Shown one piece after another: positions 373 to 30,246 of a stretch of DNA of 64,000 bases. The stretch spans positions 3,224,001 to 3,288,000 of the forward strand of contig JBLDXI010000032.1 of NCBI GenBank assembly GCA_047495785.1. The letters are read 5' to 3'. The notes beneath the pieces were generated by a model, which saw only the letters and a list, made by a program, of their open reading frames with translations, ran no database searches and was not told the origin of the DNA. A program made the translations under genes and the position numbers. Source of the stretch: Lepidodermella squamata. Its lineage: Eukaryota; Animalia; Gastrotricha. The first letter of the stretch is position 1, and each line of letters begins with the position of its first letter.

Positions 373-3300
373 ATGCACTTCGTAAGGTTTCTTGGCCTCT
401 TACTTGGGTTGGCGCTCTTCGCTTGTTTAACTAATACTAAATTGATACTGGTAAGGTGTCCTGAACAGAGAGATCCAATCTGTCGCATTATGCCTTTCAT
501 AGAGCGGAGATAGCGGTACATGCTCCAATGGGAAAACGATCAGACAAGTTGACATCTGCGATAGCTACACTGATTGTCCAGATGAAAGTGACGAAATGGA
601 CTGCCCGTGCACGGATGCCCAGTTCCGCTGCAATAACACACGCTGTGTTTCGAAAAGGCAAGCAGTCTTGATAAGCGTGATGGTCTTGTTACTAATCGAC
701 TCAATCTATTCAGTTTTTTATGTGACGGCAACAAGGCATGCAGTGATGGCAGTGACGAGTGGGATTGCCCGCCCTGTGCTGCTGACGAATTTCGATGCCC
801 TAGCACCAAGTGCATCAAAGAAACCCAGCGCTGTGATGGCTTAGCCGATTGTATTGGTGGAGAGGATGAAGCTAACTGTTCATGTGAGTAAATGAGCAGT
901 TAAAAGAATGTAGCAAGAAACAAGAATGTTGTTTAGCATGCGGGCCACGTGGATTTCACTGTCAGAATGACTTTTGTTTAACGGCCGCTTGGCTATGCGA
1001 TGGCGACGACGATTGCAGAGATGGCTCTGCGAGTGATGAAGATCCAACGATGTGCAAAACCTACACTTGCCCAGAAGACCGATTCCATTGCAGCGACAAT
1101 AAATGCATTCCAAAATCCAGGCTCTGCGATGGCATTCTCAATTGCGCGGATGATGAATTTCAAAATTGTAACTGCACGGCGGACCAGTTTGAATGCAAGG
1201 TTCGGAAACAGTGCCTACCGGGAAAGAGTTACCTGTGCGATGGTCAAAAGGATTGCCTCGACGGTACCGATGAACTTGACTGCGAAACGGTAAATTCCAT
1301 TTATTAATGCAACGAGTAACAATTTGCATACTTTATCAGTGCCCACTACCGGGTTACTTTCACTGCGAAAATGTTACCAAGTGCATACCTGAGTGGTAAA
1401 ATGTTTAAAGAGAACTCGCCCGATTCCTAACGTATACTCTCTTCTTACCAAGGAAATACTGCGATAAAGTCGATGACTGTGGTGACGGCAGCGATGAGCG
1501 TTGTGATGAATGCCCTGCATCTTCCAAGTTCAAATGTACCAATTCTACTAAATGCATCTCTAAAAGGTTAGGAATATTACCTGAAATAGTATATATGCGT
1601 AATTTCTCCTTTTAGCTATCGATGTGATGGTGATCGCGTATAGCCTTGCCGATTTTTCGTTATTCAAATTACGTTGATTACTTTGATAGGATTGCGGGTA
1701 TAACGACATATCTGACGAAATTGACTGCCCACCATGCCCGGAATTTACCTGTGTCAGCAATGGAAAATGCATAAAGAATGCTGTTGTTTGTGACAGCTCG
1801 TCAGATTGCGCGGATAGCTCGGATGAAAAAAATTGCTCAGGTTTCTTTTTATTAATCATGGCATGTCCCTAGACCAATCAGATTCGATTCACAGCATGTG
1901 CTGCAAGCGGATTCCTATGCCCCGACAAACGTTGCATTCCAGCTTCGTACCAGTAGGCCTATCGCCACCTGATAGTTTTAAGCGTTTTTCATGTTTGATT
2001 GAAGATGCGACGGCGATAAAGACTGTGGTCCAGATGGTTCAGATGAGCTCAATTGCCTGAATATTCAGGTTCAGTGTGACAATTCCACGCGTTTCCGTTG
2101 CTCCGATGGATTGTGCATCACACTGTCGCGTCGTTGCGACGACTACAAACATTGTTCAGATGACGAAATCAATTGCCCTTGCAAGGGATTTACTTGTGGC
2201 GATGGAACATGCCTCCCTGTAGAAAGTCAGTGTAATGGAACCAAGGAATGCAAAGACGGATCTGACGAAACATTATGTACCGATTCATCGGTAACATTTG
2301 GCCGCGAACATAATAATATATCATACGGAATTGCTTGTTGATTTAATTCCTAGAAATGCCCTCTCGGACGACCATTCTTATGCAGCGGAACAACGACATG
2401 CATTACATCTTCGTAACTTAGCAACATTTTCTTTGTCACGTGAGTTAGATCTCTCTTTTCCCCAGGGTTCTTTGCAACAGTGCGGCTGACTGCCCAGCTG
2501 GGGATGACGAAGCTAGCTGCACAAACTGTACCCTATCTGCTGCTGACGGTAGAACGTGGAAATGTGGCAATTCTACAAAATGCGTGAGGCTAAGTGACCG
2601 CTGCGACGGCTACAACGACTGCTTGACAAATGTCGACGAGGAAAACTGTTTAGGCTGGCCTTGTGCTGATGGTAGATTCCAATGCAGTGACGGCATTTGT
2701 CTCAATACATTCAGAGTCTGCGATTCAATCAAAAACTGTGCGAACGACGAGTTGAACTGCACGTGTACAAGCTATCAAACAAAATGCCCTGCAGGTGATT
2801 GTGTTTCACTGACAGCGTTATGCGACGGAAAGGTTGATTGTAACGATGGCTGGGATGAGTCAAACTGTACAACCGTGAGATTCCATGGTTTCATTCTGAT
2901 TCATGACTATAGGTCATTATGCTTCTAGTGCCCGAATGCTGATGATTACAAGTGCATGAACTCCACGAAATGCATACCGGCAGGTTACGTTTGTGACAAC
3001 GGCCCCGACTGTCCATTCGAGGACGATCAAAGCAACTGCGCGGTTTGCCCACTAGCAAGACCCTTTAAGTGCGCAAATGCTAGCCGCTGTCTACTCGCGT
3101 CGTGAGTTCCCCTAAGCATTTTTCACTAATGGTTATAAACTCGATATTCAACAGATATGTCTGCGATGGGGACCAGGTTTGCTCATTTAAAATAGAAATC
3201 AACTAGATATAGAATATCGGTATTTTTAGGATTGTGGAATATATGACAATTCGGATGAAATATGCCCGCCGTGCTCAGCTGAAGAATTTCGATGCTCGAC

Positions 3301-3466
3301 TGGCAGGTGCATTCCGAACTCGAACAGATGCGATGGATCGAGTGATTGCCGCAACAGTGATGACGAAGCAAATTGCACGGCCTGCGTTGGCACTGGCGTT
3401 TATTGCCCGAGCACTAAAGTTTGCGTGTCGCCTGGAACACCTTGCGCGCCTATAGCTTTGCCATGA
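373..3466 (+). CDS. LDLa-only secreted protein, copy A (signal peptide + 19 LDLa repeats + 4-Cys C-terminal half-module; multi-exon)
   Basis: ATG at 373 starts [26 protein letters not shown] (hydrophobic leader), with a donor at 451. Spliced exons give 19 six-Cys repeats with FxC..C..CDG..DC.D.SDE..C motifs, ending [18 protein letters not shown] (3464-3466). No TM segment. Intron 2 is GC-AG. Confidence 0.9.
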
Positions 3467-6420: not shown

Positions 6421-6691
6421 CTAGCGCCCGTGGTTTGCGCGACGAACCGAAGCACCGCGCCGGAAGCAGTCGGGATAAGCCTCGTGTATTACGGTCGGGT
6501 GTCGTCGAGGGCGTTGGCCTAGGTGTATTAGTCGCGATGGGGACGGAGCGAGCTACTCAACGCCTATGCGAGCGAGTTCGAGCAAAAATTCCTTTGCTCC
6601 CACAAACGATGCGTTCCAGCTTCCTATTAGTAGGCCTTAATTAAGTAGTATCGCCAACCAATTACATGTTTAACATTAAAAAAAAATTTCC

Positions 6692-6840
6692 GAAGATTCG
6701 ATGGCGATAAAGACTGCGCGGATGGTTAGGATGAGGTCAATTGCCTAAATGTTCATTGCGACAATTCCACGCATTTTCGTTGCTCCGATGGATTGTGCAT
6801 CATACTGTCGCGTCGCTGCGACGACCAAACACATTGCTCA
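6692..6840 (+). pseudogene. Orphan LDLa fragment (repeats 10-11 of the A/C type)
   Basis: Near match to 2001-2158 but with an in-frame stop (GGT TAG GAT GAG); flanked by unrelated DNA. Confidence 0.8.
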
Positions 6841-8930
6841 TCTTCAAAGTAACGTATCATTTCCTATAATTGAAGTACAGCATCTCTCCTGTACTATAAG
6901 TACAATACCGTGTGCACAGACCGATCTCCACAGTACTCAGCAGTACGGTCAGGCGTGCTGTAATGGGCTCTATAGCTTTTTACAGCTGCACAGCGAGTAC
7001 AGGGCGTCGGCCGTACTTGATTCTACAGTCTGTTTGAACAGTACTGCTGTTTTACAGAGCCATGGACTGTACTATTCAGTACTGCTGAACAAAAAAAATA
7101 GGCAAAGTGCTGGTTCTTCCGCGACAAGGACGAGTAGGTCGCTAACACTAACCCGTCTTATTGTTTAAGCTTGTCTATATATTATTTACAATTTACAATA
7201 GGCTGAACATTGAATGTTGTGATATTCCGAGGCGCATTAGGCCTTTAGATATCTGGCCTAAATTTGGCAGTGCATTTATTTTTTAAGTTTGAGTTACAGG
7301 GACTTGAGGACACGTAAAGATTGTTTTTCATTTTATTTCTGAACACTAACTGCCAAGTCAACGCGTATGATGTTGAAATGATCATTACGAAGCCGCTATG
7401 TCGATGACTATTATAAAGGGAAATTATTTCGCATGGCTAGTTTCTGAAAAATAGCTTTCCAAAACAATTAAAGTGTACCTGTTAGGTTTCAGGTTTCACG
7501 GCATCTTATTCGGGATCCCTTTGATGCGACCGGCCTAAGCTACACAAAATGGACACCGGTAAGTCTAAACATATTCATAAAAATCCTAATCTGTCCTAAT
7601 CCTATATTTTCATAGGAGTGGACATTTGCCCTGACGGAAAGGTGATTGGACCAGGGGACATCTGCGATGGTTACGCCGATTGTCGAGATGGGAGCGACGA
7701 AATGGGCTGCATCTGTAAGATTTGATGAGGTCCGCTGTAAGAACACAAGCTGTGTTTGAAAAATGTGGGACATCTTGCGCATAATCGGCCAACAACTTGA
7801 GATAAAATTGTTGTTATTTCAGCTATGTTTGTTACGGTTACAAGCCGTGCAATGAGGGTAATAGTAATAGTGACGAAAGGGATTGCCCGCCCTGCGCCGC
7901 CAATGAATTTCGATGTGCCGGCACCAAATGCATCACCGAGATTCAGCGAGATCTGCGACGGCAATTACGACTGTCCTGGGTTAAATGACGAGCTTAACTG
8001 CACATGTGAGCTATCGGATTTTTTTTTAAATTCCAGCTACGGTGTTAGCTTGCAGCTTGCAGCTCAACTGGGTTCCACTGCAAGACCAACAGGTGCATTA
8101 CTACCGTTTTCCAATGTGACGGCAAAGATGGCTCGACGGTTTCCATTGTTCCGATGGATTATGTCTCCCCCTGTCGCGACACTGCGACGGTATAGAGCAC
8201 TGTTCGGATGACGAAATCAACTACCCTTGCCAGGGCTTCACTTGTGGCGATGGAACCTGCCTTCTTCCCAGCAGCCAGTGGGATGGCAGAAAGGAGTGCA
8301 CGGACGGAGCCGGCGAAAACTGCGATGACTCCTCAGTATGTAATCATTTGCCAGGGAATAACTTAACAATCCTTCTCAATATTTTTCTCAGAAATACCCT
8401 CCGGGTCGTCCCTTTTTATGTAGTGGCACAACAAACTGCATTCCATCGTAGTCGGTTCAATTTTGCTTACTGTTAGAATTGTATTTATCTGCCTCTCAGG
8501 TTTCTATGCGATGGTGTGCATGACTGCTCGTCTGGAGACGATGAAGCAGTTTGCGCCTCAGTTTGCGCGTGTACTTTTACGGGGAATGTCGACAGAACAT
8601 GGAAATGTGGCAAATCTACGAAATGCGTTAGGCTGAGTGACCGCTGTGATGGCTACAACGACTGCAACAACATTTTTGACGAGCAAAACTATTTAGACAG
8701 GCCGTGTCCTGACGACGATGCAGCGACGGCGTTTGCATTGGTCAATACAAGGTTTGCGATTCGACCAAAAACTGTGCGAACGACGAGGTAACCTGCACGT
8801 GCAATAGCTATCAAACAAGACGCCCCTCAGGTGATTGCGCTTCATTGACACCGTTTTGCGATGGAAAGGTAGATTGCCACGACGTCTGGGACGAGTCGAA
8901 CTGCACCATTCAAGACTAATCATTCGAATA

Positions 8931-10735: not shown

Positions 10736-13700
10736 ATGCACTTCGTACGGTTTCTTGGCCTCTTACTTGGGTTAGCGCTATTTACTTGCTTAACAAATAC
10801 TAAGTTGATACTGGTAAGTCCTGAACTTTCCAGAGACATCCCAATCCGTCGCATATGCCTTGCATAGAGCGGAGAGAGCGGTAATTGCCCCGATGGAAAA
10901 GCGATCAGACAAATTGACATCTGCAATGGTTACGCTGATTGTTCCGATGAAAGTGACGAAATGGATTGCCCATGCACGGATGAAGAGTTCCGCTGTAATA
11001 ATACACGCTGTATTTATAAGAGGCAAGACTTTATAAACATAATGGCTTTTTAACTAATCGATTTAATCTATTAAGCCGCGTGTGTGACGGCTACGAGGCT
11101 TGCAGTGATGGCAGTGACGAGTGGGATTGCCCGCCCTGTGCTGCCGACGAATTTCGATGCCCTAGCACCAAGTGCATCAAAGAAACCCAGCGCTGTGATG
11201 GCGATTACGATTGCAATGGCGGAGAGGAGGAAGCTAACTGCACATGTGAGGAAATATAATCATTAAACAAATCGATGAAGAAACCAGAAAATCGAATGTT
11301 CTTTAGCATGCAGGCCAGGTGGATTTCACTGTAAGAACGACTATTGTGCCTCGATCGCCTTCCTGTGCGATGGTGAAGACGATTGCAAAGATGGCTCTTC
11401 AAGTGATGAAGATCCAACAATGTGCAAAACCTACACATGCCCGGAAACCCGATTCCGTTGCAGTGACAATAAATGCATTCCTAAATATAAAGTCTGCGAT
11501 GGTACTCACAATTGCGCGGACGATGAATTTCAAAATTGTAACTGCACGGCGGACCAGTTTGAATGCAAGATTCAGAAGCAGTGCCTACCGGGCAAGAGCT
11601 ATCAGTGCGATGGTCAAAAGGATTGCTTAGACGGTACCGATGAACTCAACTGCGAAACGGTAGAATCCATTTTTTCATGCGAAGAGAAACAAATATTGCT
11701 TACTTCATCAGTGCCCACTGCCGGGTTTCTTTCACTGCGAAAATGTTACCAAGTGCATACCTGAGTGGTTAAGTTTTTCAGTCGAGCTCGTCCGATTTGA
11801 AACGTATACTCTATTTTATACGCAGGAAATACTGCGATAAGACCGATGACTGTGGCGACGGCAGCGACGAGCTTTGTATTGAATGCCTTACATTTTCCAA
11901 GTTCAAGTGCACCAATTCTTCAAAATGCATCTCTAAAAGGTTTAACGGACTATTACCTGAAATATTATGTATCAGCATTTTCTTCTTTTTAGCTATCGAT
12001 GTGATGGTGATCACGTAGAGCCTCGCCAATATTTTGTTTTTAAAATTACATAAGATTTGATAGGACTGCGGGGATAACGACATATCTGACGAAATTGACT
12101 GCCCACCATGCCCAGAATTCACATGCAGCAATGGAAAATGCGTGAAGAATGCTGTTGTTTGCGACGGCTCGTCCGATTGCGCGGATAGCTCGGATGAAAA
12201 AAATTGTTCAGGTTTCTTTTTAAAATGTGGAATATCTCCAGTCAAATCAGATTCGATTTAGCATGCGGTGCAAATGGATTCCTATGCCCCAACAAACGAT
12301 GCATTCCAGCTTCGTACCAGTAGGCCTATCGCCACCTGATAGTTTTAGACGTTTTTCATGTTTGATTGAAGATGCGATGGCGATAAAGACTGCGGTCCAG
12401 ATGGTTCAGATGAGCTCAATTGCCTGAACATTCAGGTTCAGTGTGACAATTCCACGCGTTTCCGTTGCTCCGATGGATTGTGCATCACACTGTCGCGTCG
12501 TTGCGACGACTACAAACATTGTTCAGATGACGAAATTAATTGCCCTTGCAAGGGATTTACTTGTGGCGATGGAACATGCCTCCCCGTGGAAAGTCAGTGT
12601 AATGGAACCAAGGAATGCAAAGACGGATCTGACGAAACATTATGTATCGATTCATCAGTAAGATTTGACCATGAACATTTATAACACGGAATTGATTTAA
12701 TTCTTATTAGAAATGCCCTTTTGGACGACCATTTTTATGCAAGGGCACAACGACATGCATTACACCTTCGTAACTTTCCACCAGTTTCTTTGTCACGTGA
12801 GTTAAATCTGTCTTTTTCCAGGGTCCTTTGCAACGGTGAACCGGACTGTCCAACTGGGGATGACGAAGCAAACTGCGTAAACTGTACTCTTTCTGCTGCT
12901 GAAGGAAGAGCGTGGAAATGTGGCAATTCGACAAAATGCGTGAGGCCAAGTGACCGCTGCGATGGCTACAACGATTGCTTGACAAATGTGGACGAAGAAA
13001 ACTGTTCAGGCTGGCCCTGTCCTGAAGACAAATTCCAATGCAGCGACGGCATTTGCCTTCATCCATTCAGAGTCTGCGATTCGACTAAAAACTGCGCGAA
13101 TGACGAGTTGAACTGCTCGTGTGCAAGCTTTCAAACAAGATGCCCTTCGGGTGAATGTGTTTCATTGACTGCGTTATGCGACGGAAAGGTTGATTGTAAC
13201 GATGGCTGGGATGAGTCAAACTGTACAACTGTGAGATTCTATGGTTTCATTCTGATTCATGACTATAGGTCATTATGCTTCTAGTGCCCGAATGCTGATG
13301 ATTACAAGTGCATGAACTCGACGAAATGCATACCAGCAGGTTACGTTTGTGACAACGGCCCCGACTGTCCATTCGAGGACGATCAAAGCAACTGCGCGGT
13401 TTGCCCACTAGCAAGACCCTTTAAGTGCGCAAATGCTAGCCGCTGTCTTTATTCTTCGTGAGTCCTTCTCAAATATCGTTTGCTTTTTTTAAGCGAGATA
13501 CTCAACAGATATGTCTGCGACGGAGACCAGGTGTGTTCATATCAAATAAAATTATCAATTACAGATAACCGGTCCCTTTTGATATTCTTTAGGATTGTGG
13601 AAAAGATGACGCGTCAGATGAAATATGCCCTCCGTGCGCATCTGATGAATTCAGATGCTCGACTGGCAGGTGCATTCCGAACTCAAAGAGATGCGATGGA

Positions 13701-13829
13701 TCGAGTGATTGCCGCAATGGGGATGACGAAGCCAACTGCACGGCCTGCGTTGGTACCGGTGTTTATTGCCCGAACTTGAACGTTTGCGTGCCGCCTGAAA
13801 AACCTTGCACGCCTATAGCTATGCCATGA
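10736..13829 (+). CDS. LDLa-only secreted protein, copy C (19 LDLa repeats; close paralog of copy A)
   Basis: Same leader as A ([26 protein letters not shown]) and same exon structure. Ends [17 protein letters not shown] (13827-13829). Upstream 10370-10735 and downstream 13830-14270 are homologous to the flanks of A. Confidence 0.9.
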
Positions 13830-15000: not shown

Positions 15001-15056
15001 AATTTATTTTATGGCTAGTTTCTGAAAAATAGCTGATATTTCGCGTAGCAATTTAA

Positions 15057-17252
15057 ATGGAAATCAATGGATTTCTCTGCCTCTTATTCGGGGTTGCTTT
15101 GCTGCACGGCACAGGCAACGCTAAATGGACACCTGTAAGTCTAAACATACCTATTTGGAAACACCCTGATCTGTCCCAACGCCATCTTTTCATAGAGCGG
15201 GGATGGTGGTGTTTGCCCTGATGGAAAAGTGATCGGACGAGATGACATTTGCAATGGCTGGGCCGATTGTCGTGATGGAAGTGATGAAATGGACTGCATT
15301 TGTAAGGATGAAGAGTTCCGCTGTAATAACACACGCTGTGTTCGAAAAAGGTAGAACATCGTTTAATGATCCTGCGAAGCAGCTATCAGTGTCATTTAAC
15401 TAATTATTATCATACCTCGCTCACGCCGCTCTCTGCGGTATCAATGAGGAGAATTCAAGTACGATGACCTTTTTTCCGAGTTAGTTAAAATGATAGGAAG
15501 CACATTTTAAAATGTTGTTTTACCATTTTTCAATCATTCGTAGTTAACTTCAAAGTCGTTGAAGCATTTGCATGCCAAATATGGACTCTAAGCGCTCTAT
15601 TAGATGTTTACAGGGCACACCCATTTTTCTACACATACCTTGTCAAAGTCGAAAGTTTGGAATTCCATTTCGGCTATGTAATGATATTCCACTTTATTGC
15701 CGATGTCATTTCGGCATTGTTTTATTTCTTCGCCAACATTCTTCTACGTTCTACAGCTAAGGGAGGGGCGATAAAATGTTCCCCTTCTAGATGACCCGCA
15801 AGGCGGCCTGCTAGGGGTAGTGGTAGCTGACTCTTTTGGTCCTCGTAGAACATTACCCAGGCTCAGCGCCCAGCTGCCTTTACGCTTTTCTTGCATCCCG
15901 TTATCCTAGATTCATCGGCTGATATTAACGGATAACATTTTTTATCATTCTTCAGCTTCGTTTGTGACGGTCGCACGCAATGCACCGATGGTAGCGATGA
16001 GTGGGATTGCCCGTCCTGCGCCGCAAATGAATTTCGATGTTCTGACACCAAGTGCATCAACGATACCCAGCGCTGCGATGGCAATACCGACTGCACTTTG
16101 GGGGATGATGAAGGTCGCTGCACATGTGAGTTATCAGAATCGCATTGAACAATTCAAATCAGGGTGTTTTGTGTTGTGTATAGCTTGCAGGCCTACTGGG
16201 TTTCTTTGCAAGGTCAACAGCATATGTATCCCCGCCGCTTTCCAGTGTGATGGCCGCGACGACTGCATAGGTTATCCCTTTTATCCATTTAATGCGGGTG
16301 GCGATGAAGACCCGACGATGTGCGAATCCTATACTTGCCCAAAAGATCGATTCCGTTGCAGTGACAACAAATGCATTCCACAGTCCATGCGCTGCGATGG
16401 TCATGCCGATTGCGCGAATGATGAGATAAACTGTCTAGACTGGCCTTGCGCTGATGATAGATTTCGCTGCAGCGACGGCGTTTGCATTAGTCAATACAGC
16501 GTTTGCGATTCAACGAAAAACTGTGCGAACGACGAGGTCAACTGCACGTGCAAAAGCTCTGAAACAAGATGCCCCTCGGGCGATTGCGTTTCACTGACGG
16601 CATTTTGCGATGGAAAAGCAGACTGCTACGACGGCTGGGACGAGTCGAACTGCACTGTGGTGAATAAGACTAATCATTTGAAGCTGATTCATTTTGATAG
16701 TGTTCATTTTCTAAACCAGTGTAGAAACCCCGACGATTACATGTGTGAAAATTCTACGAAGTGCATACCAGCAAGTTTCGTCTGTGATTCTTCTACCGAA
16801 TGTCCGTTAGGCGATGATGAATACAAATTCAAATGCGATGTTTGCCCACCTTTTAAAAATGCAAGACCTTTCTTATGCGTAAATAATAGCCGCTGCCTTC
16901 CTACTTCGTGAGTTAAAATTTCCTAGTGATCTCCATAATTCATGTATGCGTTTATGCAGCGACGTGTGTGATGGATATCCGGTATTTTCATTTAAAAATT
17001 CATAGGATAACCAGTCATTTCTGTATTCATTAGGATTGCGGATACGGCGACAACTCTGATGAAATATGCCCGCCGTGCTCATCTGAAGAATTTCGATGCT
17101 CGACTGGCAAGTGCATTCCAAACGCGAAGAGATGCGATGGGTCGAGTGATTGCCGCAACGGAGATGATGAAGCGAATTGCTCGGCCTGCGTTGGCACTGG
17201 CGTTTATTGCCCGAGCACTAAAGTTTGCGTGTCGCCTGGAACATCTTGCTAG
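15057..17252 (+). CDS. LDLa-only secreted protein, copy D (10 repeats: 1-5 joined to 15-19)
   Basis: Leader [26 protein letters not shown]; intron 2 enlarged (15351-15955). The exon reads ..[19 protein letters not shown]... TAG at 17250-17252 lies six codons before the homologous stop (ACT GTA GCC ATG CCA TAA follows in frame). Confidence 0.85.
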
Positions 17253-18038: not shown

Positions 18039-18251
18039 ATCATTTGGAATGAAAATCGACTGAGTCGTTAATTACAGTTATCGGATTATTTGAGCGATTT
18101 TTGAGGAGTTGAAACTGGGTTTACAGAAATATATTATCACATTTTTTGCAGATGAGTAGCCGCCAAGCTAACACGTATTGTAAATGTGGAATGCTAATGC
18201 GCAATCAACTCACGACTTGCTTTTAACGAAAGTTACTTCATAATAATTAAG

Positions 18252-20787
18252 ATGCACGCGTTGGAGTTTCTCGGCCTCTTATTCGGGGTTGCTCTACTGA
18301 CAGGCCTAACCAACACCAAATGGATACCTGTAAGTCTTCAACATGTTTTGGGAACTATCCTATGCGTCTTTTTATAGACTGCGGATGGCGGTATTTGCTC
18401 AGATGGGAAGGTGCTTCAACAATCTGATATTTGCGACGGTTACCGTGACTGCCAAGATAGCAGTGACGAATTCGACTGCATTTGTAAGGATTACGAGTTC
18501 CGCTGTAATAACACACGCTGCATTCAAAATAGGCAAGGCGCCTTTCCCATTCATACCGATTTGTTACTAAACACCAAATTGTATTCAGATTCGTGTGTGA
18601 CGGTTCCGAGGATTGCAGTGATGGTAGTGACGAGCGGGATTGCACGCCCTGCGCCGCCAATGAATTTAGATGTGCCAACACCAAGTGTATCAATGAAACC
18701 CAGCTTTGTGATGGCAATTACGATTGCAGTGGGCTTGAAGATGAGCTCAACTGCACTAGTGAGTTACACAGATTAAAGGGTTTATCTAGTCTTTCTAAGA
18801 TGGGGGGTCGGTAGCCGCCCATGAGGGTAAAATCAAAGGCTCAAAAATACCCCGAAAACTTTAGGGTGGGACGGATGTATAGATGAACCATTGTTTGATT
18901 ATGCAATTTAACCTATGGCTTTGTTTATAGCTTGCAGCTCAACTGGGTTCCACTGCAAGACCGATATGTGTATTCCCGTCGCTTTCCAATGTGACGGTGA
19001 CGACGATTGCAAAGATGAATCAGCAAGTGATGAGGATCCAATGGTATGCAAAGCTCACACTTGTGCGGAAGATCGATTCCGTTGCAGTGAAAATAAATGC
19101 ATTCCGAATTACCGGCTCTGCGATGGCACTGCCCAATGTGCCGATGGCAGCGACGAGATTTGCGCTGAATGCCCTGCATATGCCACGTTCAAGTGTGCCA
19201 CTGGGAGCCAATGTGTGAACAATGACAGAGTTTGCGACGGTTCGTCCCATTGCGCAGATGGCTCTGATGAAATCAATTGCTCAGGTTGGTTTGTTGCACA
19301 TGCATATTTGTGAACAAATTTCTCCTGACTCACAGCATGTGGTGAATATGGATTCCTATGCTCTGACAAACGATGCATTCGCGCTGCGTACCAGTATGCT
19401 AATCGCAACGTGATAGAATTATGAATAATCTATGATTCAAAAATATTTGTGAAGATGCGATGGAGGTAAAGACTGCGCCGATGGTTCAGACGAAGTTAAT
19501 TGTCCCTGCTTGGGTTTTACTTGTGGCGATGGAACCTGCGTCCCTGAGGACGGGAAATGTAATGGTACCAAAGAATGCAAAGACGGATCTGATGAGCTTT
19601 GTATTGACGCTTCAGTGAGTGTTTTGTCACAGGTCACAGATATATTATAGATTCTTCTTTGATCTAACTATTAGAAATGTCCTGTGAGCCGTCCGTTTTT
19701 ATGCAGTGGGACAACTAACTGCATTCAGTCTTCGTAATTTTCGAACAATTTCTTTGTCACGGGTTAAAAACTCTCTTTTTCCAGGCAGCTTTGCAATGGT
19801 CTCACCGACTGCCCAACTGGGGAGGATGAGGCTAACTGCTCTGCATGTAATCTTTCTGCTGGTGACGACAGATCGTATAAATGCGGCAATAGTACAAGAT
19901 GCGTTTCGCCGATCGTCCGCTGCGACGGCGATAACGATTGTTTCAACAATGCGGACGAACAAAACTGTTTAGGCTGGCCTTGTGCTGATGATAGATTCCG
20001 ATGCAGTGACGGAATTTGTCTTAATCAATTCAGAGTCTGCGATTTAATTAAAAACTGTGCGAACGACGAGTTGAACTGCACGTGCACGAGCTATCAAACA
20101 AGATGTCCTTCTGGTGAATGCGTTTTGTTGGCAGCAATCTGTGACGGCAAGGCCGATTGCTACGACGGCTGGGATGAGTCGAACTGCACAATTGTAAGAT
20201 TCAAAGGCTTAAATCTGATTCATAGCTAAGTCACTATGTTTCTAGTGCCCGAACACTGATGATTACAAGTGCGTAAACTCCACTAAATGCATACCGGTAG
20301 GTGCTGTCTGCGACAGAAGCGCTGACTGTCCATTCGGTGATGATCAAAGCAACTGCACTGTTTGTCCACCAGCCAGACCTTTTAAATGCGCAACCTCTGG
20401 CACCTGTCTCCCTGCTTCGTGAGTCATTATTAGCTATTTATTGCCAGCGTTTAAGTTCGATATTCAACAGGTATGTCTGCGATGGAGACCAGGTATGTTT
20501 ATTTATTCAAGGAAAACTATAAAATAAGGATAACAAATCGTTGTCTGTAGGATTGTGAAAGCGAAGACGAATCGGATGAAATATGCCCACCGTGCTTAGC
20601 TGACGAGTTCCGATGCTCGACTGGCAGGTGCATTCCGAACTCGAAGAGATGCGATGGATCGAGTGATTGCCGCAATGGAGATGACGAAGCAAATTGCACG
20701 GCCTGCGTTGGTACCGCCGTTTATTGCCCGATCACTCGATCTTGCGTGTCGCCTGGAACACCTTGTTCGCCGCAAGCTATGCCCTGA
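18252..20787 (+). CDS. LDLa-only secreted protein, copy E (15 repeats)
   Basis: Leader [26 protein letters not shown]. Repeats 1-4, then three hybrid-looking repeats (5/7, 8/9, 10/11), then 12-19. Ends [17 protein letters not shown] (20785-20787). GC donor at 18533. Confidence 0.88.
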
Positions 20788-22180
20788 GTATGACTGTCTA
20801 TTTTGACTACAATAATACAAATATTAGCATTACGAGCAGGATATGCTAGTTTCGATTCGTAATACTTACCCGGCTTGGTGACTCATGTCCTCATTAAGTT
20901 GAATAAAGGTTTAGAAAATGAAAATCCTCACCGTTCGGCACATTCGTTGTGGAACCACGATGCGCACGCTGATTAGGCGATCATTCGCTGCTATGACTTC
21001 CGGATGAAACATTCAGTCGTGCAATCCATTAGATTTTTTGTAAAAAGTGCCGCAGTAATTTACCTCGATTTATATGGAGTTTACGATCGTGTTCAATGGA
21101 ACTTCTGCCAGAACCAGAACTTATAACAGAACTTCTACCAACTATCAGCTATCAAGACACAAGCTCTCAAAGTTCTCACGATATCATGTTCACCATGTAT
21201 GCCACTATCTCTTTCCACTCATCGGAATTTAAAGTTTCAAACTTACAAGCCAAAATTAGAATAGATTACCTATATCTGTTGTTATTGAAAAACAAGTTGA
21301 GCTGTGCCTTTTGAGAACATCGAAAAACTTGGAATGGGATCAGCCATTTCTAGCCAAACCTATTTACGGTTATTTCTATTGATTCCCAACGCGGTCTACT
21401 AGTGAAGAGTTGAAAAGTTGAGCTTTTGTATTCACGATTCGAGTTCACGTGGCGGTTCTCTTGAATGTTAGCATGTTGTAGTTATATTATATAGGCCCTC
21501 CACCTATGTTTGACAAATAACAGAAATAATTCGCCCCCATGCTGAAAACGGCTTACGATGCATATCCACCCATATCACACCAGGCTCTTCACAGGGCTAA
21601 ATGCTCAAAGGCTCAGGGCTCAGGCTCAAGAATCCGGTGTTAGATAATGTCAGGCTCAGGATCAGGCTCTGGAACTAGAAATTATAGGGGCTCATTTAAC
21701 GTGACTTACGTTCCAGGTTCGGGAAGGCTTAGGGCTCGTGCACAGGGGCTCTCAGGACCTAAAGGCTCAACAAGGGAACAGAAAGAAAACATGGCAGTAA
21801 GGGCTATCGAGGATCTGTGATCTGTGAATCTGTGATTCTCTTGTTTTGCGCCTGTGAGGGGGCGACATTGCTTCGGTGGATGCCAGGCTGGGCAGTGCTG
21901 GTCGAGCATCCGCTTGCCGAAGGCATCAGGCTGCTGACTGGCGATATACTGCAAGTACTCTTCCATGCCATTATCCGCGGTGAGACAGCGTTCACCATAG
22001 CGCTCCAGTTGTTTCTCAAATACGTCGCTGATTGCTGTAGCCTTCGCTTCGACGACGACTCCGAAGGAATCGCACTCAAATGGCTGATCCACTGCCGCTC
22101 TTAACCCGTGAGCTTGAAAATTGAAAAGGCGCAGTTCGGAACTTTTTGGCAGCCAGTACCAAACAGGAGACCCATATGTG

Positions 22181-23326
22181 TATATATTGGACATAGAGGA
22201 GGAAATATGTTGAAAAACCGAACATATAATGGCCGAGCCGCAGGCGAGGACGTTTTATGTGCGGTTTTTTAACATATTTACGACTCTAAGTCCAATATTT
22301 GCATATACCCCGAGGCATAGTAGCATCTACCGATTGCCAGGGCTCCATTGAAATACCTACCCCCACGTTGCGAAGGTTAAAAAATCATGGAAAATGGGAA
22401 AATAAAACATCCAACTTAATTTTTCTTCAAAAATTGACCTTTTCGCCATTTTTAAATCAAACGCTCATTCGGTCGATTTTCGTTTTGATTTTCACTCGCT
22501 TTTTTGCCGCCGGATTTTCGCGTCAAACTGGCATGCTGCTACGATGAAGAATCGAACAATGGCTCGAGCTATTTTAACTGTCGGCTCATCAAATCAACCA
22601 GGCGAGTGAATTCGGCTCATTGCAACTAGTTCGCCGATCTGGTTATTGTCGATCTCAAGCTCAATCAAGGTTTCGATCCCGTACGAGGAAGCGTGTCGTC
22701 GAACCAGTTCGAGCCAGGAACGAAGGCTGATGGAATGGTACGAAATGCAAGACGAATACGGCGCCGTTTTGACTAATTCCAGGATCAAGAGGAATGCTAC
22801 GCGTTTCTCAACATTGAGAGCGACTGCTGCTCAGAGTTCGCAGTTGTTCCGTTGGAGTTCTGGGTTTTATCGACATCGGAGCTGACTGCTGCTCGATTTT
22901 CACTGAATTGTGGCCGAATGCTGCTCGTTTTCTCGAAATTGGGGCCGAATGCTGCTCGATTTTGTCGGAATTGAGGACGATTGCTGCTCGATTTTCTCGA
23001 AATTGGGGCCGAATGCTGCTCGATTTTGTCGGAATTGAGGACGATTGCTGCTCGATTTTCTCGGTATCAGGGGTGAATGCTGGCAGATTTTTGAGCCGCC
23101 CCAGCTTTTCCAAGAGATTGTTTGATTTTGAATAATAAAGCTATTTTGGGTTCCTCAGGTTTCTTGGGTTTCATGAGTTTCAAGGGTCTGAACAATAGAC
23201 AACTGTCCAATATGTGCTCCTCCTTAAAAAATCAAGTGTCCAATATGTGAAAATCAACTGTCCATTATGTAAAATTATGTAAACATATAATTACATATAG
23301 CCCTAACATATACTTGGCCTAGGGGT
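22181..23326. mobile_element. TIR-less ~1.15-kb insertion flanked by 7-bp direct repeat ATATGTG (duplicate at 25345-26490)
   Basis: ATATGTG at 22174-22180 and 23327-23333. Removing the insert restores the LINE frame VLT-Y-GSPVW. Sub-terminal inverted motifs: TATTGGACA/TGTCCAATA and CATATACCCC..GG/CC..GGGGTATATG. Confidence 0.7.
22880..23065. repeat. 32-bp minisatellite, ~6 units with two alternating variants (duplicate at 26044-26229)
   Basis: TGCTGCTCGATTTTCTCGAAATTGGGGCCGAA alternates with TGCTGCTCGATTTTGTCGGAATTGAGGACGAT. Confidence 0.85.
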
Positions 23327-23440
23327 ATATGTGAGCACGCTGTCGATGAGAACTCGGCTGAACGTGATGCAAAGATCGCTGAGGACAATACGCCTACAAG
23401 CTATTTCTCGGCGAGCTCGCGGTTTCGTCTTCGCAGAGAT

Positions 23441-23951
23441 ACTCCACTAAATGCATACCGGTAGGTGCTGTCTGCGACAGAAGCGCTGACTGTCCATTCG
23501 GTGATGATCAAAGCAACTGCACTGTTTGTCCACCAGCCAGACCTTTTAAATGCGCAACCTCTGGCACCTGTCTCCCTGCTTCGTGAGTCATTATTAGCTA
23601 TTTATTGCCAGCGTTTAAGTTCGATATTCAACAGGTATGTCTGCGATGGAGACCAGGTATGTTTATTTATTCAAGGAAAACTATAAAATAAGGATAACAA
23701 ATCGTTGTCTGTAGGATTGTGAAAGCGAAGACGAATCGGATGAAATATGCCCACCGTGCTTAGCTGACGAGTTCCGATGCTCGACTGGCAGGTGCATTCC
23801 GAACTCGAAGAGATGCGATGGATCGAGTGATTGCCGCAATGGAGATGACGAAGCAAATTGCACGGCCTGCGTTGGTACCGCCGTTTATTGCCCGATCACT
23901 CGATCTTGCGTGTCGCCTGGAACACCTTGTTCGCCGCAAGCTATGCCCTGA
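23441..23951 (+). pseudogene. Duplicated 3' end of LDLa copy E (repeats 17-19, no 5' end)
   Basis: Identical to 20277-20787; begins mid-exon at the duplication junction. Confidence 0.85.
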
Positions 23952-24989
23952 GTATGACTGTCTATTTTGACTACAATAATACAAATATTAGCATTACGAG
24001 CAGGATATGCTAGTTTCGATTCGTAATACTTACCCGGCTTGGTGACTCATGTCCTCATTAAGTTGAATAAAGGTTTAGAAAATGAAAATCCTCACCGTTC
24101 GGCACATTCGTTGTGGAACCACGATGCGCACGCTGATTAGGCGATCATTCGCTGCTATGACTTCCGGATGAAACATTCAGTCGTGCAATCCATTAGATTT
24201 TTTGTAAAAAGTGCCGCAGTAATTTACCTCGATTTATATGGAGTTTACGATCGTGTTCAATGGAACTTCTGCCAGAACCAGAACTTATAACAGAACTTCT
24301 ACCAACTATCAGCTATCAAGACACAAGCTCTCAAAGTTCTCACGATATCATGTTCACCATGTATGCCACTATCTCTTTCCACTCATCGGAATTTAAAGTT
24401 TCAAACTTACAAGCCAAAATTAGAATAGATTACCTATATCTGTTGTTATTGAAAAACAAGTTGAGCTGTGCCTTTTGAGAACATCGAAAAACTTGGAATG
24501 GGATCAGCCATTTCTAGCCAAACCTATTTACGGTTATTTCTATTGATTCCCAACGCGGTCTACTAGTGAAGAGTTGAAAAGTTGAGCTTTTGTATTCACG
24601 ATTCGAGTTCACGTGGCGGTTCTCTTGAATGTTAGCATGTTGTAGTTATATTATATAGGCCCTCCACCTATGTTTGACAAATAACAGAAATAATTCGCCC
24701 CCATGCTGAAAACGGCTTACGATGCATATCCACCCATATCACACCAGGCTCTTCACAGGGCTAAATGCTCAAAGGCTCAGGGCTCAGGCTCAAGAATCCG
24801 GTGTTAGATAATGTCAGGCTCAGGATCAGGCTCTGGAACTAGAAATTATAGGGGCTCATTTAACGTGACTTACGTTCCAGGTTCGGGAAGGCTTAGGGCT
24901 CGTGCACAGGGGCTCTCAGGACCTAAAGGCTCAACAAGGGAACAGAAAGAAAACATGGCAGTAAGGGCTATCGAGGATCTGTGATCTGT

Positions 24990-27040
24990 GAATCTGTGAT
25001 TCTCTTGTTTTGCGCCTGTGAGGGGGCGACATTGCTTCGGTGGATGCCAGGCTGGGCAGTGCTGGTCGAGCATCCGCTTGCCGAAGGCATCAGGCTGCTG
25101 ACTGGCGATATACTGCAAGTACTCTTCCATGCCATTATCCGCGGTGAGACAGCGTTCACCATAGCGCTCCAGTTGTTTCTCAAATACGTCGCTGATTGCT
25201 GTAGCCTTCGCTTCGACGACGACTCCGAAGGAATCGCACTCAAATGGCTGATCCACTGCCGCTCTTAACCCGTGAGCTTGAAAATTGAAAAGGCGCAGTT
25301 CGGAACTTTTTGGCAGCCAGTACCAAACAGGAGACCCATATGTGTATATATTGGACATAGAGGAGGAAATATGTTGAAAAACCGAACATATAATGGCCGA
25401 GCCGCAGGCGAGGACGTTTTATGTGCGGTTTTTTAACATATTTACGACTCTAAGTCCAATATTTGCATATACCCCGAGGCATAGTAGCATCTACCGATTG
25501 CCAGGGCTCCATTGAAATACCTACCCCCACGTTGCGAAGGTTAAAAAATCATGGAAAATGGGAAAATAAAACATCCAACTTAATTTTTCTTCAAAAATTG
25601 ACCTTTTCGCCATTTTTAAATCAAACGCTCATTCGGTCGATTTTCGTTTTGATTTTCACTCGCTTTTTTGCCGCCGGATTTTCGCGTCAAACTGGCATGC
25701 TGCTACGATGAAGAATCGAACAATGGCTCGAGCTATTTTAACTGTCGGCTCATCAAATCAACCAGGCGAGTGAATTCGGCTCATTGCAACTAGTTCGCCG
25801 ATCTGGTTATTGTCGATCTCAAGCTCAATCAAGGTTTCGATCCCGTACGAGGAAGCGTGTCGTCGAACCAGTTCGAGCCAGGAACGAAGGCTGATGGAAT
25901 GGTACGAAATGCAAGACGAATACGGCGCCGTTTTGACTAATTCCAGGATCAAGAGGAATGCTACGCGTTTCTCAACATTGAGAGCGACTGCTGCTCAGAG
26001 TTCGCAGTTGTTCCGTTGGAGTTCTGGGTTTTATCGACATCGGAGCTGACTGCTGCTCGATTTTCACTGAATTGTGGCCGAATGCTGCTCGTTTTCTCGA
26101 AATTGGGGCCGAATGCTGCTCGATTTTGTCGGAATTGAGGACGATTGCTGCTCGATTTTCTCGAAATTGGGGCCGAATGCTGCTCGATTTTGTCGGAATT
26201 GAGGACGATTGCTGCTCGATTTTCTCGGTATCAGGGGTGAATGCTGGCAGATTTTTGAGCCGCCCCAGCTTTTCCAAGAGATTGTTTGATTTTGAATAAT
26301 AAAGCTATTTTGGGTTCCTCAGGTTTCTTGGGTTTCATGAGTTTCAAGGGTCTGAACAATAGACAACTGTCCAATATGTGCTCCTCCTTAAAAAATCAAG
26401 TGTCCAATATGTGAAAATCAACTGTCCATTATGTAAAATTATGTAAACATATAATTACATATAGCCCTAACATATACTTGGCCTAGGGGTATATGTGAGC
26501 ACGCTGTCGATGAGAACTCGGCTGAACGTGATGCAAAGATCGCTGAGGACAATACGCCTACAAGCTATTTCTCGGCGAGCTCGCGGTTTCGTCTTCGCAG
26601 AGATACGGTCGAGGTGGCATTCCCACGACAGTTTCGCCGTGATCGTGATTCACAGGTATTTCACTTCGCTAACTTGAGGGATCCGTTGACCAGCAATGGA
26701 GAGGAGAACCGACGGAGACGCAGCGCCTGTGTGACCGATTAAAATACTTTCGCATTTCGCAGGGCTGCATCACTAATCAGACGGAAAAGTGGGTCGACAG
26801 CGCCTCGGAGTCTTCCAAATCCATACTGATGTTCGGGTAGCAGGCTCTGAGCTTCCAAGAAATTTTGTAGCATCATGGCTACCAGTGACTCTAGAAGCTT
26901 CGAGAAGGCTGGCAACAGTGACACCGGGCGGTATGATTCCGGAAGCCTGCTATCCTTTCCCTCCTTCAAGATCGGCACGAGGATCGTCATTTTCCATTCA
27001 GTCGGCACAATTCGAACGCGTACTTCCTCGAACGCTCGCG
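24990..27040 (-). mobile_element. Decayed non-LTR retrotransposon (LINE) reverse-transcriptase remnant with nested insertion; partial duplicate at ~21826-23440
   Basis: PTEWKMTILVPILKEGKD..PESYRPVSLLPAFSKLLE..PEHQYGF (RT N-terminal motifs). An internal deletion removes the catalytic core. Then EVKYL*ITITAKLSWECHL..LIDSVLTY|insertion|GSPVW. Confidence 0.85.
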
Positions 27041-27496
27041 GAAAATTGATTGTTCATTGTGAAATGCCACTTTTTTATTCGAAACAAAATAAAATGGAAT
27101 TGAATGAATTAATGAATTAATGAAGCATTTGAAGTCATACATCATGCTGAGGATTGTGATAATGCGATCTTTGCTCTGGATGACCGACAAGCTGTTCGGG
27201 CATACGTGTTAAAAGTTACCATCATCAAAATAGAAAGGCTGCGGTAATCGTGTAGATAACTATACTTGGATACACTGTTTCAACGTCGAAGCAGCCGACA
27301 TTTTTTGTTTTTTTGTAATAAAATTGTACTAAATTATTACATTTTTTCAAAGATGATTAGATGCCAAGCTAACACGTTTTGTCAGTATGGAATGCTATGG
27401 AATGCTAATGCTATTCAACATTCCGTCGAGCTTCAATAACAAGCAATACTCTGCTCACGCCTTACTTTTGACGAAAGTTTCTTCATAAGATTTAAC

Positions 27497-29123
27497 ATGC
27501 AGGCTTTAACGTTTCTCGGCCTCTTATTCGGAGTTGCTCTCCTGACTGGGCTTGTCAACACCCAATGGATACCGGTAAGTCTGCACAATTTGTGGGATAT
27601 ATTACTCTATCTGTCGTATTATACTTTGCAAAGAATGGAGATGGCGGAATTTGCCCGGATGGAAAAGTGCTCCGACGAGCTGAAATTTGCGATGGTTACC
27701 GCGACTGTCAAGATGGAAGTGACGAAGTGGACTGCATTTGTCAGTTCAATGATTTCCCCTGTAATAACTCAGGCTGCATTCTAAGGAGGTATAATGCGCC
27801 CTCCCCGTTCTTAAAAAAATACCATCCAAACATCTAATATTGTTCAGACTCGTTTGCGACGGTTCCAAGGATTGCAGTGATGGCAGTGACGAGTCGTATT
27901 GTCCTCCTTGCGCCACTAATCAATTTCGATGTGTTGGCGCCAAATGCATTGACAAAAGCCTGCTCTGTGATGGCGAATACGACTGCGATGAGGGAGAGGA
28001 TGAGTCGAACTGCTCATGTGAGTTTAGAATCCCATTGAATAATTAAAACTAGGCTGTTGTCTATAGCTTGCAAGTCAACTGGGTTCCACTGCAAGAACGG
28101 CGAATGTATTCGTGGCACTTTGCAATGCGATGGCGAGGATGATTGCGAAGATGGATCAGCAAGCGATGAAGATCCAGCGATTTGCAAAGTCTACACTTGC
28201 GCAGAAGATCGGTTCCGTTGTAGCCACAATAAATGCATCCCGAAATATCAGGTCTGCGATGGCTACAACGACTGTTTGAACGATGCAGACGAGCTAAACT
28301 GCTTAGGCTGGCCTTGTGATGATGATAAATTCCGATGCAGCGACGGCATTTGCATTGGCCAATCGAGAGTTTGTGATTCAATCAAAGATTGCGCGAACGA
28401 CGAGTTGAACTGCACGTGCACAAGCTATCAGACAAAGTGCCCTTCAGGTGGATGCGTTTCATTTTCGGAAATGTGTGACGGCAAAGCTGATTGCAACGAC
28501 GGCTGGGACGAGTCGAACTGCACTACTGTAGGTTTATGGCGTAATTTTAATCTCCGACTGGGTAATTATGCTTCTAGTGCCCGGACGCTGACGATTACAA
28601 GTGCAAAAACTCTACTAAATGCATACGGGCAGACGCGGTCTGTGACAGCGATGCCGACTGTCCATTTGGTGATGATCAAAGCAACTGCGCGGTTTGCCCA
28701 CCAGCCAGACCTTTCAAATGCGCAAACTCTGGCCGATGTCTCCGTGCTTCGTGAGTCATTCTTATTAGCTTTACATGTCTTTTAATCAAGCTTTATGTTA
28801 TACAGGTATGTTTGCGATGGAGATCAGGTAGATTCATTTCGAAGCCACATTTTAGAGACATAATCAGTCGATTTGGTATTCATTAGGATTGCGGAAACGG
28901 AGACAACTCAGATGAAATATGCCGGCCATGCTCATCTGGAGAATTTCGATGCTCGACTGGCCGGTGCATTCCTAACTCGAAGAGATGCGATGGATCGAAC
29001 GATTGCCGCAACGGTGATGACGAAGCGAACTGCACGGCCTGCGTTGGAACGAGCGTTTATTGTCCGAGCACTAAAGTTTGCGTGTCGCCAGGAACACCTT
29101 GCTCGCCTGTTGCTGCGCCATGA
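27497..29123 (+). CDS. LDLa-only secreted protein, copy F (10 repeats: 1-4, 5/14 hybrid, 15-19)
   Basis: Leader [26 protein letters not shown]; ..[29 protein letters not shown]..; ends [17 protein letters not shown] (29121-29123). Confidence 0.9.
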
Positions 29124-30219: not shown

Positions 30220-30246
30220 TTCTAATGATTTTATTGATATTCAAGA

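What the first reader, a model, noticed from the sequence alone, without database searches (positions are those of the whole stretch)
373..29123. Tandem array of secreted LDLa-only proteins that vary in repeat number (19/19/10/15/10)
Seen: five intact-looking paralogs plus pseudogenes share a 26-aa leader exon, repeats 1-4, repeats 15-19 and a 4-Cys tail, but differ in the middle. None has a TM helix, YWTD/EGF modules or a protease domain. Established: LDLa clusters normally sit in LDLR/LRP receptors or modular proteases and bind basic ligands through Ca2+-caged acidic residues. Inference: a lineage-specific family of soluble multivalent binders (decoy, scavenger, egg-coat or mucus component) under birth-and-death evolution, with valency as the variable trait.
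Basis: partly seen in the sequence, partly recalled or inferred. Interest (0 to 1): 0.75.

Follow-up and report, generated by a model that had tools for sequence, protein, structure and literature searches.

The report
Tandem secreted LDLa-repeat-only gene family
A small freshwater animal (probably the gastrotrich Lepidodermella squamata) has a tandem cluster of intact genes for exported proteins made only of 10 to 19 calcium-binding LDL-receptor type A modules; the family is real, under purifying selection and not described anywhere I could search, but what it does is still unknown.

Summary
On the + strand, 373-29123 carries five intact multi-exon genes. Each encodes a 26-residue signal-like leader, then 19, 19, 10, 15 or 10 LDLa modules, then a 4-Cys cap. 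There is also one decayed pseudogene and one 3' gene fragment. Pfam finds only PF00057. No hydrophobic segment follows the leader, no TM-like exon is shared downstream, and contig C32 has no YWTD match. Cysteine counts fit 4 + 6(n-1) + 4 exactly, so every contraction kept whole modules. Pairwise dN/dS is 0.20-0.28 (dS 0.31-1.1), and exons are more conserved than introns, so these are working genes. The family is larger than the window. Five genes have 19 modules, one has 16, one 15 and two 10, and a more distant subfamily has about 9-13. They lie on three contigs of a 121-Mb genome that matches the published L. squamata assembly in size, contig number and GC. Three word-index protein searches found no close relative. 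The function was not tested. The best inference is a soluble, very acidic, Ca2+-dependent multivalent binder of basic partners. I rate it a new variant of a known kind, of moderate interest.

The parts
373..3466 (+). Gene c1: 15 exons, 780 aa, leader + 19 LDLa + 4-Cys cap. The leader exon is 373-450 and the stop is TGA at 3464-3466.
   Evidence: Junction scoring; model translation without stops; 19 HMM domains; Pfam PF00057 only.
6588..6849 (+). Orphan pseudogene piece, similar to repeats 10C-11.
   Evidence: 74% DNA match to c1 1911-2158; a lone LDLa match at 6754-6849.
7255..8916 (+). Decayed copy (pseudogene). The leader region has no ATG and has lost its frame. There are frameshifts inside repeat 3, at the junction of repeat 4 with the next repeat, and between repeats 14 and 15. 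Several Cys are replaced by W, Y or R. Repeats 17-19 and the tail are missing.
10736..13829 (+). Gene c2: 15 exons, 779 aa, 19 LDLa. It is the closest paralog of c1 (86% aa identity, dS 0.31).
15057..17252 (+). Gene c3: 7 exons, 435 aa, 10 LDLa (1-4, 5N/14C hybrid, 15-19). Intron 2 is 605 nt. Its TAG stop lies 6 codons before the stop position of the other copies.
18252..20787 (+). Gene c4: 11 exons, 624 aa, 15 LDLa (1-4, 5N/7C, 8N/9C, 10/11, 12-19).
20277..26606 (+). Two 100% identical tandem units of 3164 nt. The first holds the 3' end of c4. The second therefore holds a leaderless 3' gene fragment (23441-23951: end of repeat 17, repeats 18 and 19, tail, stop).
   Evidence: Self-BLAST, 3166 nt at 100%; LDLa matches at 23434-23529 and 23754-23870.
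27497..29123 (+). Gene c5: 7 exons, 431 aa, 10 LDLa (1-4, 5N/14C hybrid, 15-19).
658..713 (+). Intron 2 of c1, a GC-AG intron (AAG|GCAAG). It splits LDLa repeat 2 just before its fourth Cys. The same GC donor occurs in c2 and c4.

Best explanation
This is a tandem, same-strand cluster of independent protein-coding genes. They belong to one lineage-restricted family of at least 9 intact-looking core members plus a more distant subfamily, in a 121-Mb animal genome that is probably Lepidodermella squamata.

Each protein has four parts:
- A short cleavable-type signal leader.
- A 4-Cys LDLa variant that lacks the C1-C3 disulfide.
- Then 9 to 18 canonical 6-Cys LDLa modules, joined by linkers of only 1-2 residues.
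- A 4-Cys cap that looks like the N-terminal hairpin half of one more LDLa.

Nothing else is present, so the product should be a soluble, strongly acidic, disulfide-rich extracellular chain of Ca2+-binding modules (D+E 17%, K+R 9%).

Shown here: the architecture, the intactness, purifying selection, in-register loss of modules through recombination between repeats, and gene gain and decay.

Inferred from established LDLa biochemistry (LDLR/LRP-RAP type lysine docking into the Ca2+-caged acidic pocket): the proteins act outside the cell as multivalent, Ca2+-dependent binders of basic (Lys/Arg-rich) surfaces on a partner. Paralogs would then differ mainly in how many binding modules they offer. 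The partner and the tissue are unknown.
For: - Gene models have no stops. Introns are 48-63 nt except two of 172 and 605 nt, and all are GT/GC-AG.
- Pfam finds only PF00057.
- After the leader, the highest Kyte-Doolittle 19-residue mean is no more than 1.0. The leader has about 5 residues followed by a 14-residue hydrophobic core.
- Homology between diverged paralogs starts about 14-43 nt before the ATG and ends at the stop.
- No hydrophobic open frame is shared downstream.
- Contig C32 has no PF00058 match.
- Mature Cys counts are exactly 4 + 6(n-1) + 4, and the median linker is 2 residues.
- Every c1 repeat keeps the terminal acidic pair. Asp follows C4 in 17 of 19 repeats and precedes C5 in 14 of 19.
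- dN/dS is 0.20-0.28 for all ten pairs, and 0.30-0.41 when Cys, Asp and Glu codons are left out. c1-c2 exons are 90.1% identical against 84.1% for introns, and introns carry five times more indel bases.
- Orthologous repeats are 55-100% identical between paralogs, against 35-55% between different repeats of one protein. The 19-module layout is therefore older than the gene duplications.
- Family census.
- The closest solved structures are the LDLa clusters of LRP2, VLDLR, LRP4 and LDLR.
Against:
- I judged signal-peptide cleavage by eye only.
- Only about 40% of repeats carry the full D-x-S-D-E type docking motif.
- Three c1 repeats (5, 11, 15) have a C5-C6 loop 1-2 residues shorter than the usual 8 (6 in repeats 11 and 15, 7 in repeat 5), and 7 of 19 have the aromatic residue two positions before C4. 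Not every module need be a lysine clamp.
- One- or two-residue linkers fit a stiff structural rod as well as a flexible multivalent binder.
- The AlphaFold model of the last exon was of low confidence (pLDDT 63).
Confidence: 0.6

Rival explanations
1. The proteins are structural parts of an extracellular material (egg shell, cuticle, adhesive or mucus) rather than ligand scavengers. The stiff bead chain would serve as a Ca2+-stabilised, disulfide-rich building block.
For: Linkers are only 1-2 residues. The proteins are 15% Cys with 6-16 N-x-S/T sites, and many paralogs share the same layout. In C. elegans, the LDL-receptor-repeat oocyte proteins EGG-1/2 are needed for eggshell integrity (PMC13042291). 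One flatworm adhesive protein carries an LDLa module (PMC6410801).
Against: There are no low-complexity, mucin-like or cross-linking repeats, and no vWD, ZP or chitin-binding domains. The Ca2+-cage acidic residues are kept in nearly every module, as expected if binding matters. This reading overlaps the best explanation rather than excluding it.
Confidence: 0.25
2. The leader is an uncleaved signal anchor, so the proteins are type II membrane proteins that display LDLa repeats on the cell surface, like C. elegans EGG-1/EGG-2.
For: The only hydrophobic segment is N-terminal. EGG-1/2 are LDL-receptor-repeat proteins on the oocyte plasma membrane (PMC13042291).
Against: Only about 5 residues precede a hydrophobic core of about 14 residues. 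That is shorter than a typical membrane span and leaves no cytoplasmic domain. Small or polar residues follow the core, as in cleavable signals. No prediction tool was available.
Confidence: 0.08
3. The copies are exon blocks of one large LRP-like receptor gene, or they splice alternatively onto a TM exon.
For: All copies lie head to tail on one strand with short spacers: 454 nt between the copy just upstream of the window and c1, and 1.0-1.2 kb between c2, c3 and c4.
Against: - Every copy has its own ATG leader exon and a conserved stop directly after the cap.
- Paralog homology ends at the stop.
- The cap and the next gene's first module do not add up to one LDLa.
- There is no YWTD match on the 4.5-Mb contig.
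- No hydrophobic exon is shared downstream.
Confidence: 0.03
4. The array is non-functional or an assembly artefact, with duplicates created by whole-genome amplification or mis-assembly.
For: If the genome is the published L. squamata assembly, it was made from MDA-amplified DNA of one animal (PMC11660948). One 3164-nt unit is present twice at 100% identity.
Against: The five genes differ by dS 0.31-1.1 with dN/dS about 0.2. Artefactual copies would be identical, and dead genes would drift towards dN/dS of 1 and pick up stops, as the real pseudogene at 7255-8916 has done. The artefact concern applies only to the identical 3.2-kb unit.
Confidence: 0.04

Closest known systems
Ligand-binding LDLa clusters of the LDL receptor family (LDLR, VLDLR, LRP1, LRP2, LRP4)
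   Same: Tandem 6-Cys, Ca2+-caging class A modules. These are the best sequence matches among solved structures (LRP2, VLDLR, LRP4, LDLR). The expected chemistry is the same: acidic pockets that clamp Lys/Arg of ligands.
   Different: There are no EGF modules, no YWTD propeller, no membrane span and no cytoplasmic tail. Linkers are 1-2 residues. The first module is a 4-Cys variant and the last is a half module. The proteins are encoded as a tandem multigene family with 10-19 modules.
C. elegans EGG-1 / EGG-2 (LDL-receptor-repeat oocyte surface proteins; PMC13042291, citing Kadandale et al. 2005)
   Same: The extracellular part consists of LDL receptor repeats only. They are a closely linked paralog pair. 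They give a precedent for an LDLa-only ectodomain acting at the egg surface or eggshell.
   Different: EGG-1/2 sit in the plasma membrane. From memory they are type II proteins with about 8 repeats. The proteins here have only a short signal-like leader and 10-19 repeats. I did not test sequence orthology.
NRAP-1 (secreted LDLa protein that gates NMDA receptors in C. elegans; PMC11531325)
   Same: It is a soluble secreted protein whose LDLa module, with intact disulfides and Ca2+ site, is the functional binding element. It has an aromatic residue in the Ser position of DxSDE. Repeat 16 of every paralog here has DGWDE.
   Different: NRAP-1 has a single LDLa plus a conserved helical C-terminal domain and is about 18 kDa. 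The proteins here have no non-LDLa domain and many modules.
Small LDLa receptors and soluble receptor fragments (CD320, Tva, soluble LDLR/VLDLR ectodomains)
   Same: LDLa modules alone are enough for ligand capture. CD320 appears among the PDB matches.
   Different: Those proteins have 1-8 modules and are membrane-anchored or shed from a receptor gene. They are not a dedicated secreted multigene family.

Membership tests
Pfam PF00057 Ldl_recept_a (domain family) | About 40-residue module with six Cys in the canonical spacing and a C-terminal acidic Ca2+-binding motif | tested here: met
   PF00057 matches above the gathering score across the array. The models hold 19/19/10/15/10 domains. Cys arithmetic is exact. 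The acidic residues are tabulated.
LDL receptor family (LDLR/VLDLR/LRP) | Cluster of LDLa ligand-binding repeats | tested here: met
LDL receptor family (LDLR/VLDLR/LRP) | EGF-precursor homology region with a YWTD (Ldl_recept_b) beta-propeller | tested here: not met
   Pfam finds only PF00057 on the exons tested, and the LDLa domains tile the models end to end. PF00058 gives 5 matches in the whole genome, none on contig C32.
LDL receptor family (LDLR/VLDLR/LRP) | Single membrane span with a cytoplasmic NPxY-type tail | tested here: not met
   No 19-residue window has a hydropathy mean above 1.0 after the leader. The stop follows the cap directly in all copies. No hydrophobic open frame is shared downstream.
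EGG-1/EGG-2-like type II LDLa surface proteins | N-terminal cytoplasmic segment plus a signal-anchor membrane span | tested here: inconclusive
   About 5 residues precede a hydrophobic core of about 14 residues. That favours a cleaved signal, but no signal-peptide predictor or experiment was available.
EGG-1/EGG-2-like type II LDLa surface proteins | Sequence orthology to the nematode proteins | not tested
   No nematode sequence was fetched. Any LDLa-based score would be dominated by generic domain similarity.
NRAP-1-like secreted LDLa proteins | Single LDLa flanked by the conserved helical C-terminal domain | tested here: not met
   The proteins hold 10-19 LDLa modules and no sequence outside LDLa modules apart from the leader and linkers of 1-6 residues.
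Modular LDLa serine proteases (corin, matriptase, HP14 type) | C-terminal trypsin-like protease domain | tested here: not met
   The complete models run from ATG to stop with LDLa modules only.

The most novel reading that the evidence does not exclude
The soluble LDLa-only proteins may be the detachable ligand-binding arms of a split LDL receptor. An earlier, unverified note on this genome (s1-430106) describes neighbouring receptor genes with propeller/EGF/TM parts but no LDLa modules. The secreted LDLa chains, in versions with 10 to 19 modules, could dock onto such receptors or onto another surface partner and deliver cargo. Ligand capture and endocytosis would then be encoded by separate, independently evolving genes. 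A related untested variant: as polyvalent lysine clamps, they could serve as the acidic release factor proposed for duo-gland temporary adhesion (model in PMC6410801).
Probability: 0.05. Interest if true: 0.8.

Novelty: new variant of a known kind. Interest (0 to 1): 0.38.

Why it matters
LDLa modules are known almost entirely as parts of membrane receptors or modular proteases. Here a dedicated multigene family of exported proteins is made of nothing else, is held under purifying selection, and has repeatedly lost whole modules in register. It would be a natural experiment on how binding valency is tuned. It also gives a starting point for extracellular biology (yolk or lipid transport, egg shell, cuticle, adhesion) in Gastrotricha, a phylum with almost no molecular data. 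The published genome paper does not mention these genes. Without expression or ligand data it remains a well-annotated family of unknown role.

Tried and rejected
1. Word-index protein searches. I ran three:
- The large exon of c3, which reaches candidates of 183-583 aa. No hits.
- Exon 12 of c1, 75-238 aa. No hits.
- The last exon of c5, 43-136 aa. Only three ENA exon fragments of an ordinary LRP-like gene, sharing one word run.

2. The large representative search (search of protein representatives) was not run. The proteins have no non-LDLa segment, and the cap is itself half an LDLa. The PDB search showed that total score tracks the target's repeat number: LRP2 scored 525 bits over 12 stretches. 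The 150 listed hits would be LRP-type giants, so the search would not tell orthologs apart and was not worth its cost.

3. Joined (spliced) protein models were built only inside local scripts, for counting, hydropathy and dN/dS. They were not sent to any remote tool. All remote queries were single exons given by reference.

5. The protein atlas returned only generic LDLa clusters.

6. The AlphaFold model of the last exon, from a 15-row alignment, was poor (pLDDT 62.7). It was not used for a fold search. It weakly suggests a beta-hairpin in the cap.

7. Literature searches for a described LDLa-only secreted family found none. They turned up EGG-1/2 and NRAP-1 as comparators.

8. Diversifying selection: no 60-codon window of c1-c2 had dN/dS above 0.52.

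9. A single origin for the two 10-module genes is weakly rejected. They are together in 1% of bootstrap trees, and the AU test gives p = 0.045. This is borderline, and gene conversion could produce the same result.
Full report
**Context**

The window is G000:C32:3224001-3288000 of a 121.2-Mb assembly in 151 contigs, with about 43% GC. Earlier notes of this scan call the genome 'probably the gastrotrich Lepidodermella squamata'. The published assembly of that species has 122 Mb, 157 contigs and 43% GC, and was made from MDA-amplified DNA (PMC11660948). That matches, so I accept the identification as probable but not proven. The paper never mentions LDL or lipoprotein. The sequence is not human.

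**Checking the observation**

- A self-comparison shows head-to-tail homologous blocks on the + strand at about 11-3520, 7255-8906, 10366-13872, 14831-17275, 18209-20787, 23441-23951 and 27454-29136.
- An LDLa HMM built from the window gives 89 matches, all on the + strand.
- Pfam PF00057 scored in six frames over the whole genome confirms them.
- Many modules are split by short introns. I therefore scored every GT/GC...AG pair around each gap by the LDLa score of the joined peptide.
- This gives five complete models without stops:

| Gene | Coordinates | Exons | Length | LDLa modules |
|---|---|---|---|---|
| c1 | 373-3466 | 15 | 780 aa | 19 |
| c2 | 10736-13829 | 15 | 779 aa | 19 |
| c3 | 15057-17252 | 7 | 435 aa | 10 |
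| c4 | 18252-20787 | 11 | 624 aa | 15 |
| c5 | 27497-29123 | 7 | 431 aa | 10 |

- Introns are 48-63 nt, except one of 605 nt (c3) and one of 172 nt (c4).
- All introns are GT-AG except intron 2, which is GC-AG in c1, c2 and c4.

**Anatomy**

- Exon 1 encodes 26 residues: about 5 residues, then a 14-residue hydrophobic core, then polar residues. GTAAG follows directly.
- Module 1 has four Cys. It lacks the pair that would form the C1-C3 disulfide.
- Canonical 6-Cys modules follow. The cap after the last module has four invariant Cys, spaced like the N-terminal hairpin half of an LDLa (C-x6-C-x5-C-x6-C).
- Mature Cys counts are exactly 4 + 6(n-1) + 4 in all five proteins. Linkers between modules have a median of 2 residues, range 1-6.
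- The proteins are 15% Cys, 17% Asp+Glu and 9% Lys+Arg, with 6-16 N-x-S/T sites.
- After the leader, no 19-residue window exceeds a hydropathy mean of 1.0.
- Pfam finds only PF00057 on the exons tested.
- In c1 all 19 modules keep the terminal acidic pair. Asp follows C4 in 17 of them and precedes C5 in 14. Eight show the full D-x-S-D-E type motif. Three (5, 11, 15) have a C5-C6 loop 1-2 residues shorter than the usual 8.

**Independent genes, not one receptor**

- Each copy has its own ATG leader and a stop directly after the cap.
- DNA homology between diverged paralogs begins 14-43 nt before the ATG and ends at the stop.
- The intergenic stretches hold no hydrophobic open frame shared between copies.
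- The genome has only five YWTD (PF00058) matches, none on this 4.5-Mb contig.

**Selection and history**

- All ten pairwise comparisons give dN/dS of 0.20-0.28. dS ranges from 0.31 (c1-c2) to about 1.1.
- With Cys, Asp and Glu codons left out, dN/dS is still 0.30-0.41. No 60-codon window of c1-c2 exceeds 0.52.
- c1-c2 exons are 90.1% identical with 15 indel bases. Introns are 84.1% identical with 75 indel bases in a third of the length.
- The genes are therefore maintained as coding sequence. I saw no sign of diversifying selection.
- Each module of c2-c5 matches one particular module of c1 at 48-100% identity, against 35-55% for other modules. The 19-module layout is therefore older than the gene duplications, and the shorter genes are contractions.
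- c3 and c5 join the N-half of module 5 to the C-half of module 14. c4 has three hybrid modules: 5N/7C, 8N/9C and 10/11.
- Every junction is in register, although the deleted DNA included introns. This points to recombination between repeats.

**Family beyond the window**

- The last exon finds 12 loci at 73% identity or more (11 on C32, one on C1) and five at 51-56% (C32 and C7).
- I fetched 13 neighbouring or related stretches. In them, leader, first exon, modules 15-17 and last exon recur in order.
- One 19-module gene ends 82 nt before the window starts, which is 454 nt before the c1 ATG.
- Further 19-module genes lie at about C32:3.333 Mb and, on the minus strand, at 3.170 Mb.
- A gene of about 16 modules is on C1. 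There are fragments at 3.128 and 2.845 Mb.
- A more distant subfamily has about 9-13 modules. Counts outside the window are estimates from HMM matches.
- A tree of four concatenated blocks puts c1 with c2 (support 99/99) and c4 with the C1 gene (81/91). It does not join c3 and c5: they group together in 1% of bootstrap trees, and the AU test gives p = 0.045. The contraction to 10 modules may have happened twice, but the evidence is borderline and gene conversion could mimic it.

**Decayed material**

- The copy at about 7255-8916 has no usable leader, several frameshifts and Cys replacements, and lacks modules 17-19.
- An orphan piece lies at 6588-6849.
- A 3164-nt unit (20277-23440) is repeated at 100% identity (23441-26604). 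This creates a leaderless 3' fragment. Given the MDA origin of the probable assembly, I cannot exclude an artefact for this piece alone.

**Relatives elsewhere**

- Three word-index searches found no close relative. The third returned only exon fragments of an ordinary LRP-like gene.
- Against solved structures, the best matches are LRP2, VLDLR, LRP4 and LDLR. LRP2 wins through its number of repeats.
- For that reason I did not run the large representative search. With no non-LDLa segment in the query, its list would be filled by LRP-type proteins.
- Joined spliced models were used only in local scripts. Remote tools received single exons by reference.

**Interpretation**

- The architecture, intactness, constraint and birth-and-death pattern are shown.
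- That the proteins are secreted is a strong inference from the leader.
- That they bind basic partners through Ca2+-caged acidic pockets follows from established LDLa biochemistry and from the conserved acidic positions. It is untested, and not every module carries the full docking motif.
- The very short linkers would also suit a stiff structural role.
- Comparators from the literature are the LDL-receptor-repeat oocyte proteins EGG-1/2 (PMC13042291) and the secreted single-LDLa protein NRAP-1 (PMC11531325). The family fails the defining features of both, and those of the LDL receptor family proper.
- I rate it a new variant of a known kind, of moderate interest.

Noticed in passing
window 29622-30320 (+): A separate small gene directly after c5. 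It has a hydrophobic N-terminus, three LDLa modules (PF00057), then a hydrophobic stretch near 30210-30250 that could be a membrane span. It looks like a small CD320/LDLRAD-like receptor.
   Followed up: partly
window 20277-26606: A perfect tandem duplication of a 3164-nt unit, including a 32-nt minisatellite (22865-23082 and 26029-26246). It is either very recent or an amplification/assembly artefact.
   Followed up: partly
window 658-713, 11023-11075, 18533-18588: Intron 2 uses a GC donor (AG|GCAAG) in c1, c2 and c4, but GT in c3 and c5.
   Followed up: yes
window 2761-2877 and the orthologous module in c2-c5: Module 16 has DGWDE in every paralog, with Trp in the Ser position of DxSDE. PMC11531325 reports an aromatic residue at this position as rare and typical of secreted NRAP-1.
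   Followed up: no
window 31000-63000: A cluster of MFS sugar-transporter paralog pieces (PF00083), including an 86% identical duplication (52034-54112 / 57153-59258). There are three Cys-loop channel-like single-exon ORFs (48759-49520 -, 50667-51518 +, 61873-62940 -) and a Laminin_G_3-like ORF (42709-43596 -).
   Followed up: partly
L001 6823-9919 and window 343-372: The upstream family member ends only 454 nt before the c1 ATG. A TTTCAG acceptor-like site lies 30 nt upstream of the c1 and c2 start codons.
   Followed up: no
window 31076-31702 (-): A 208-aa ORF with a sushi-like Cys/Trp pattern followed by a Thr-rich mucin-like stretch. It has no Pfam match.
   Followed up: no
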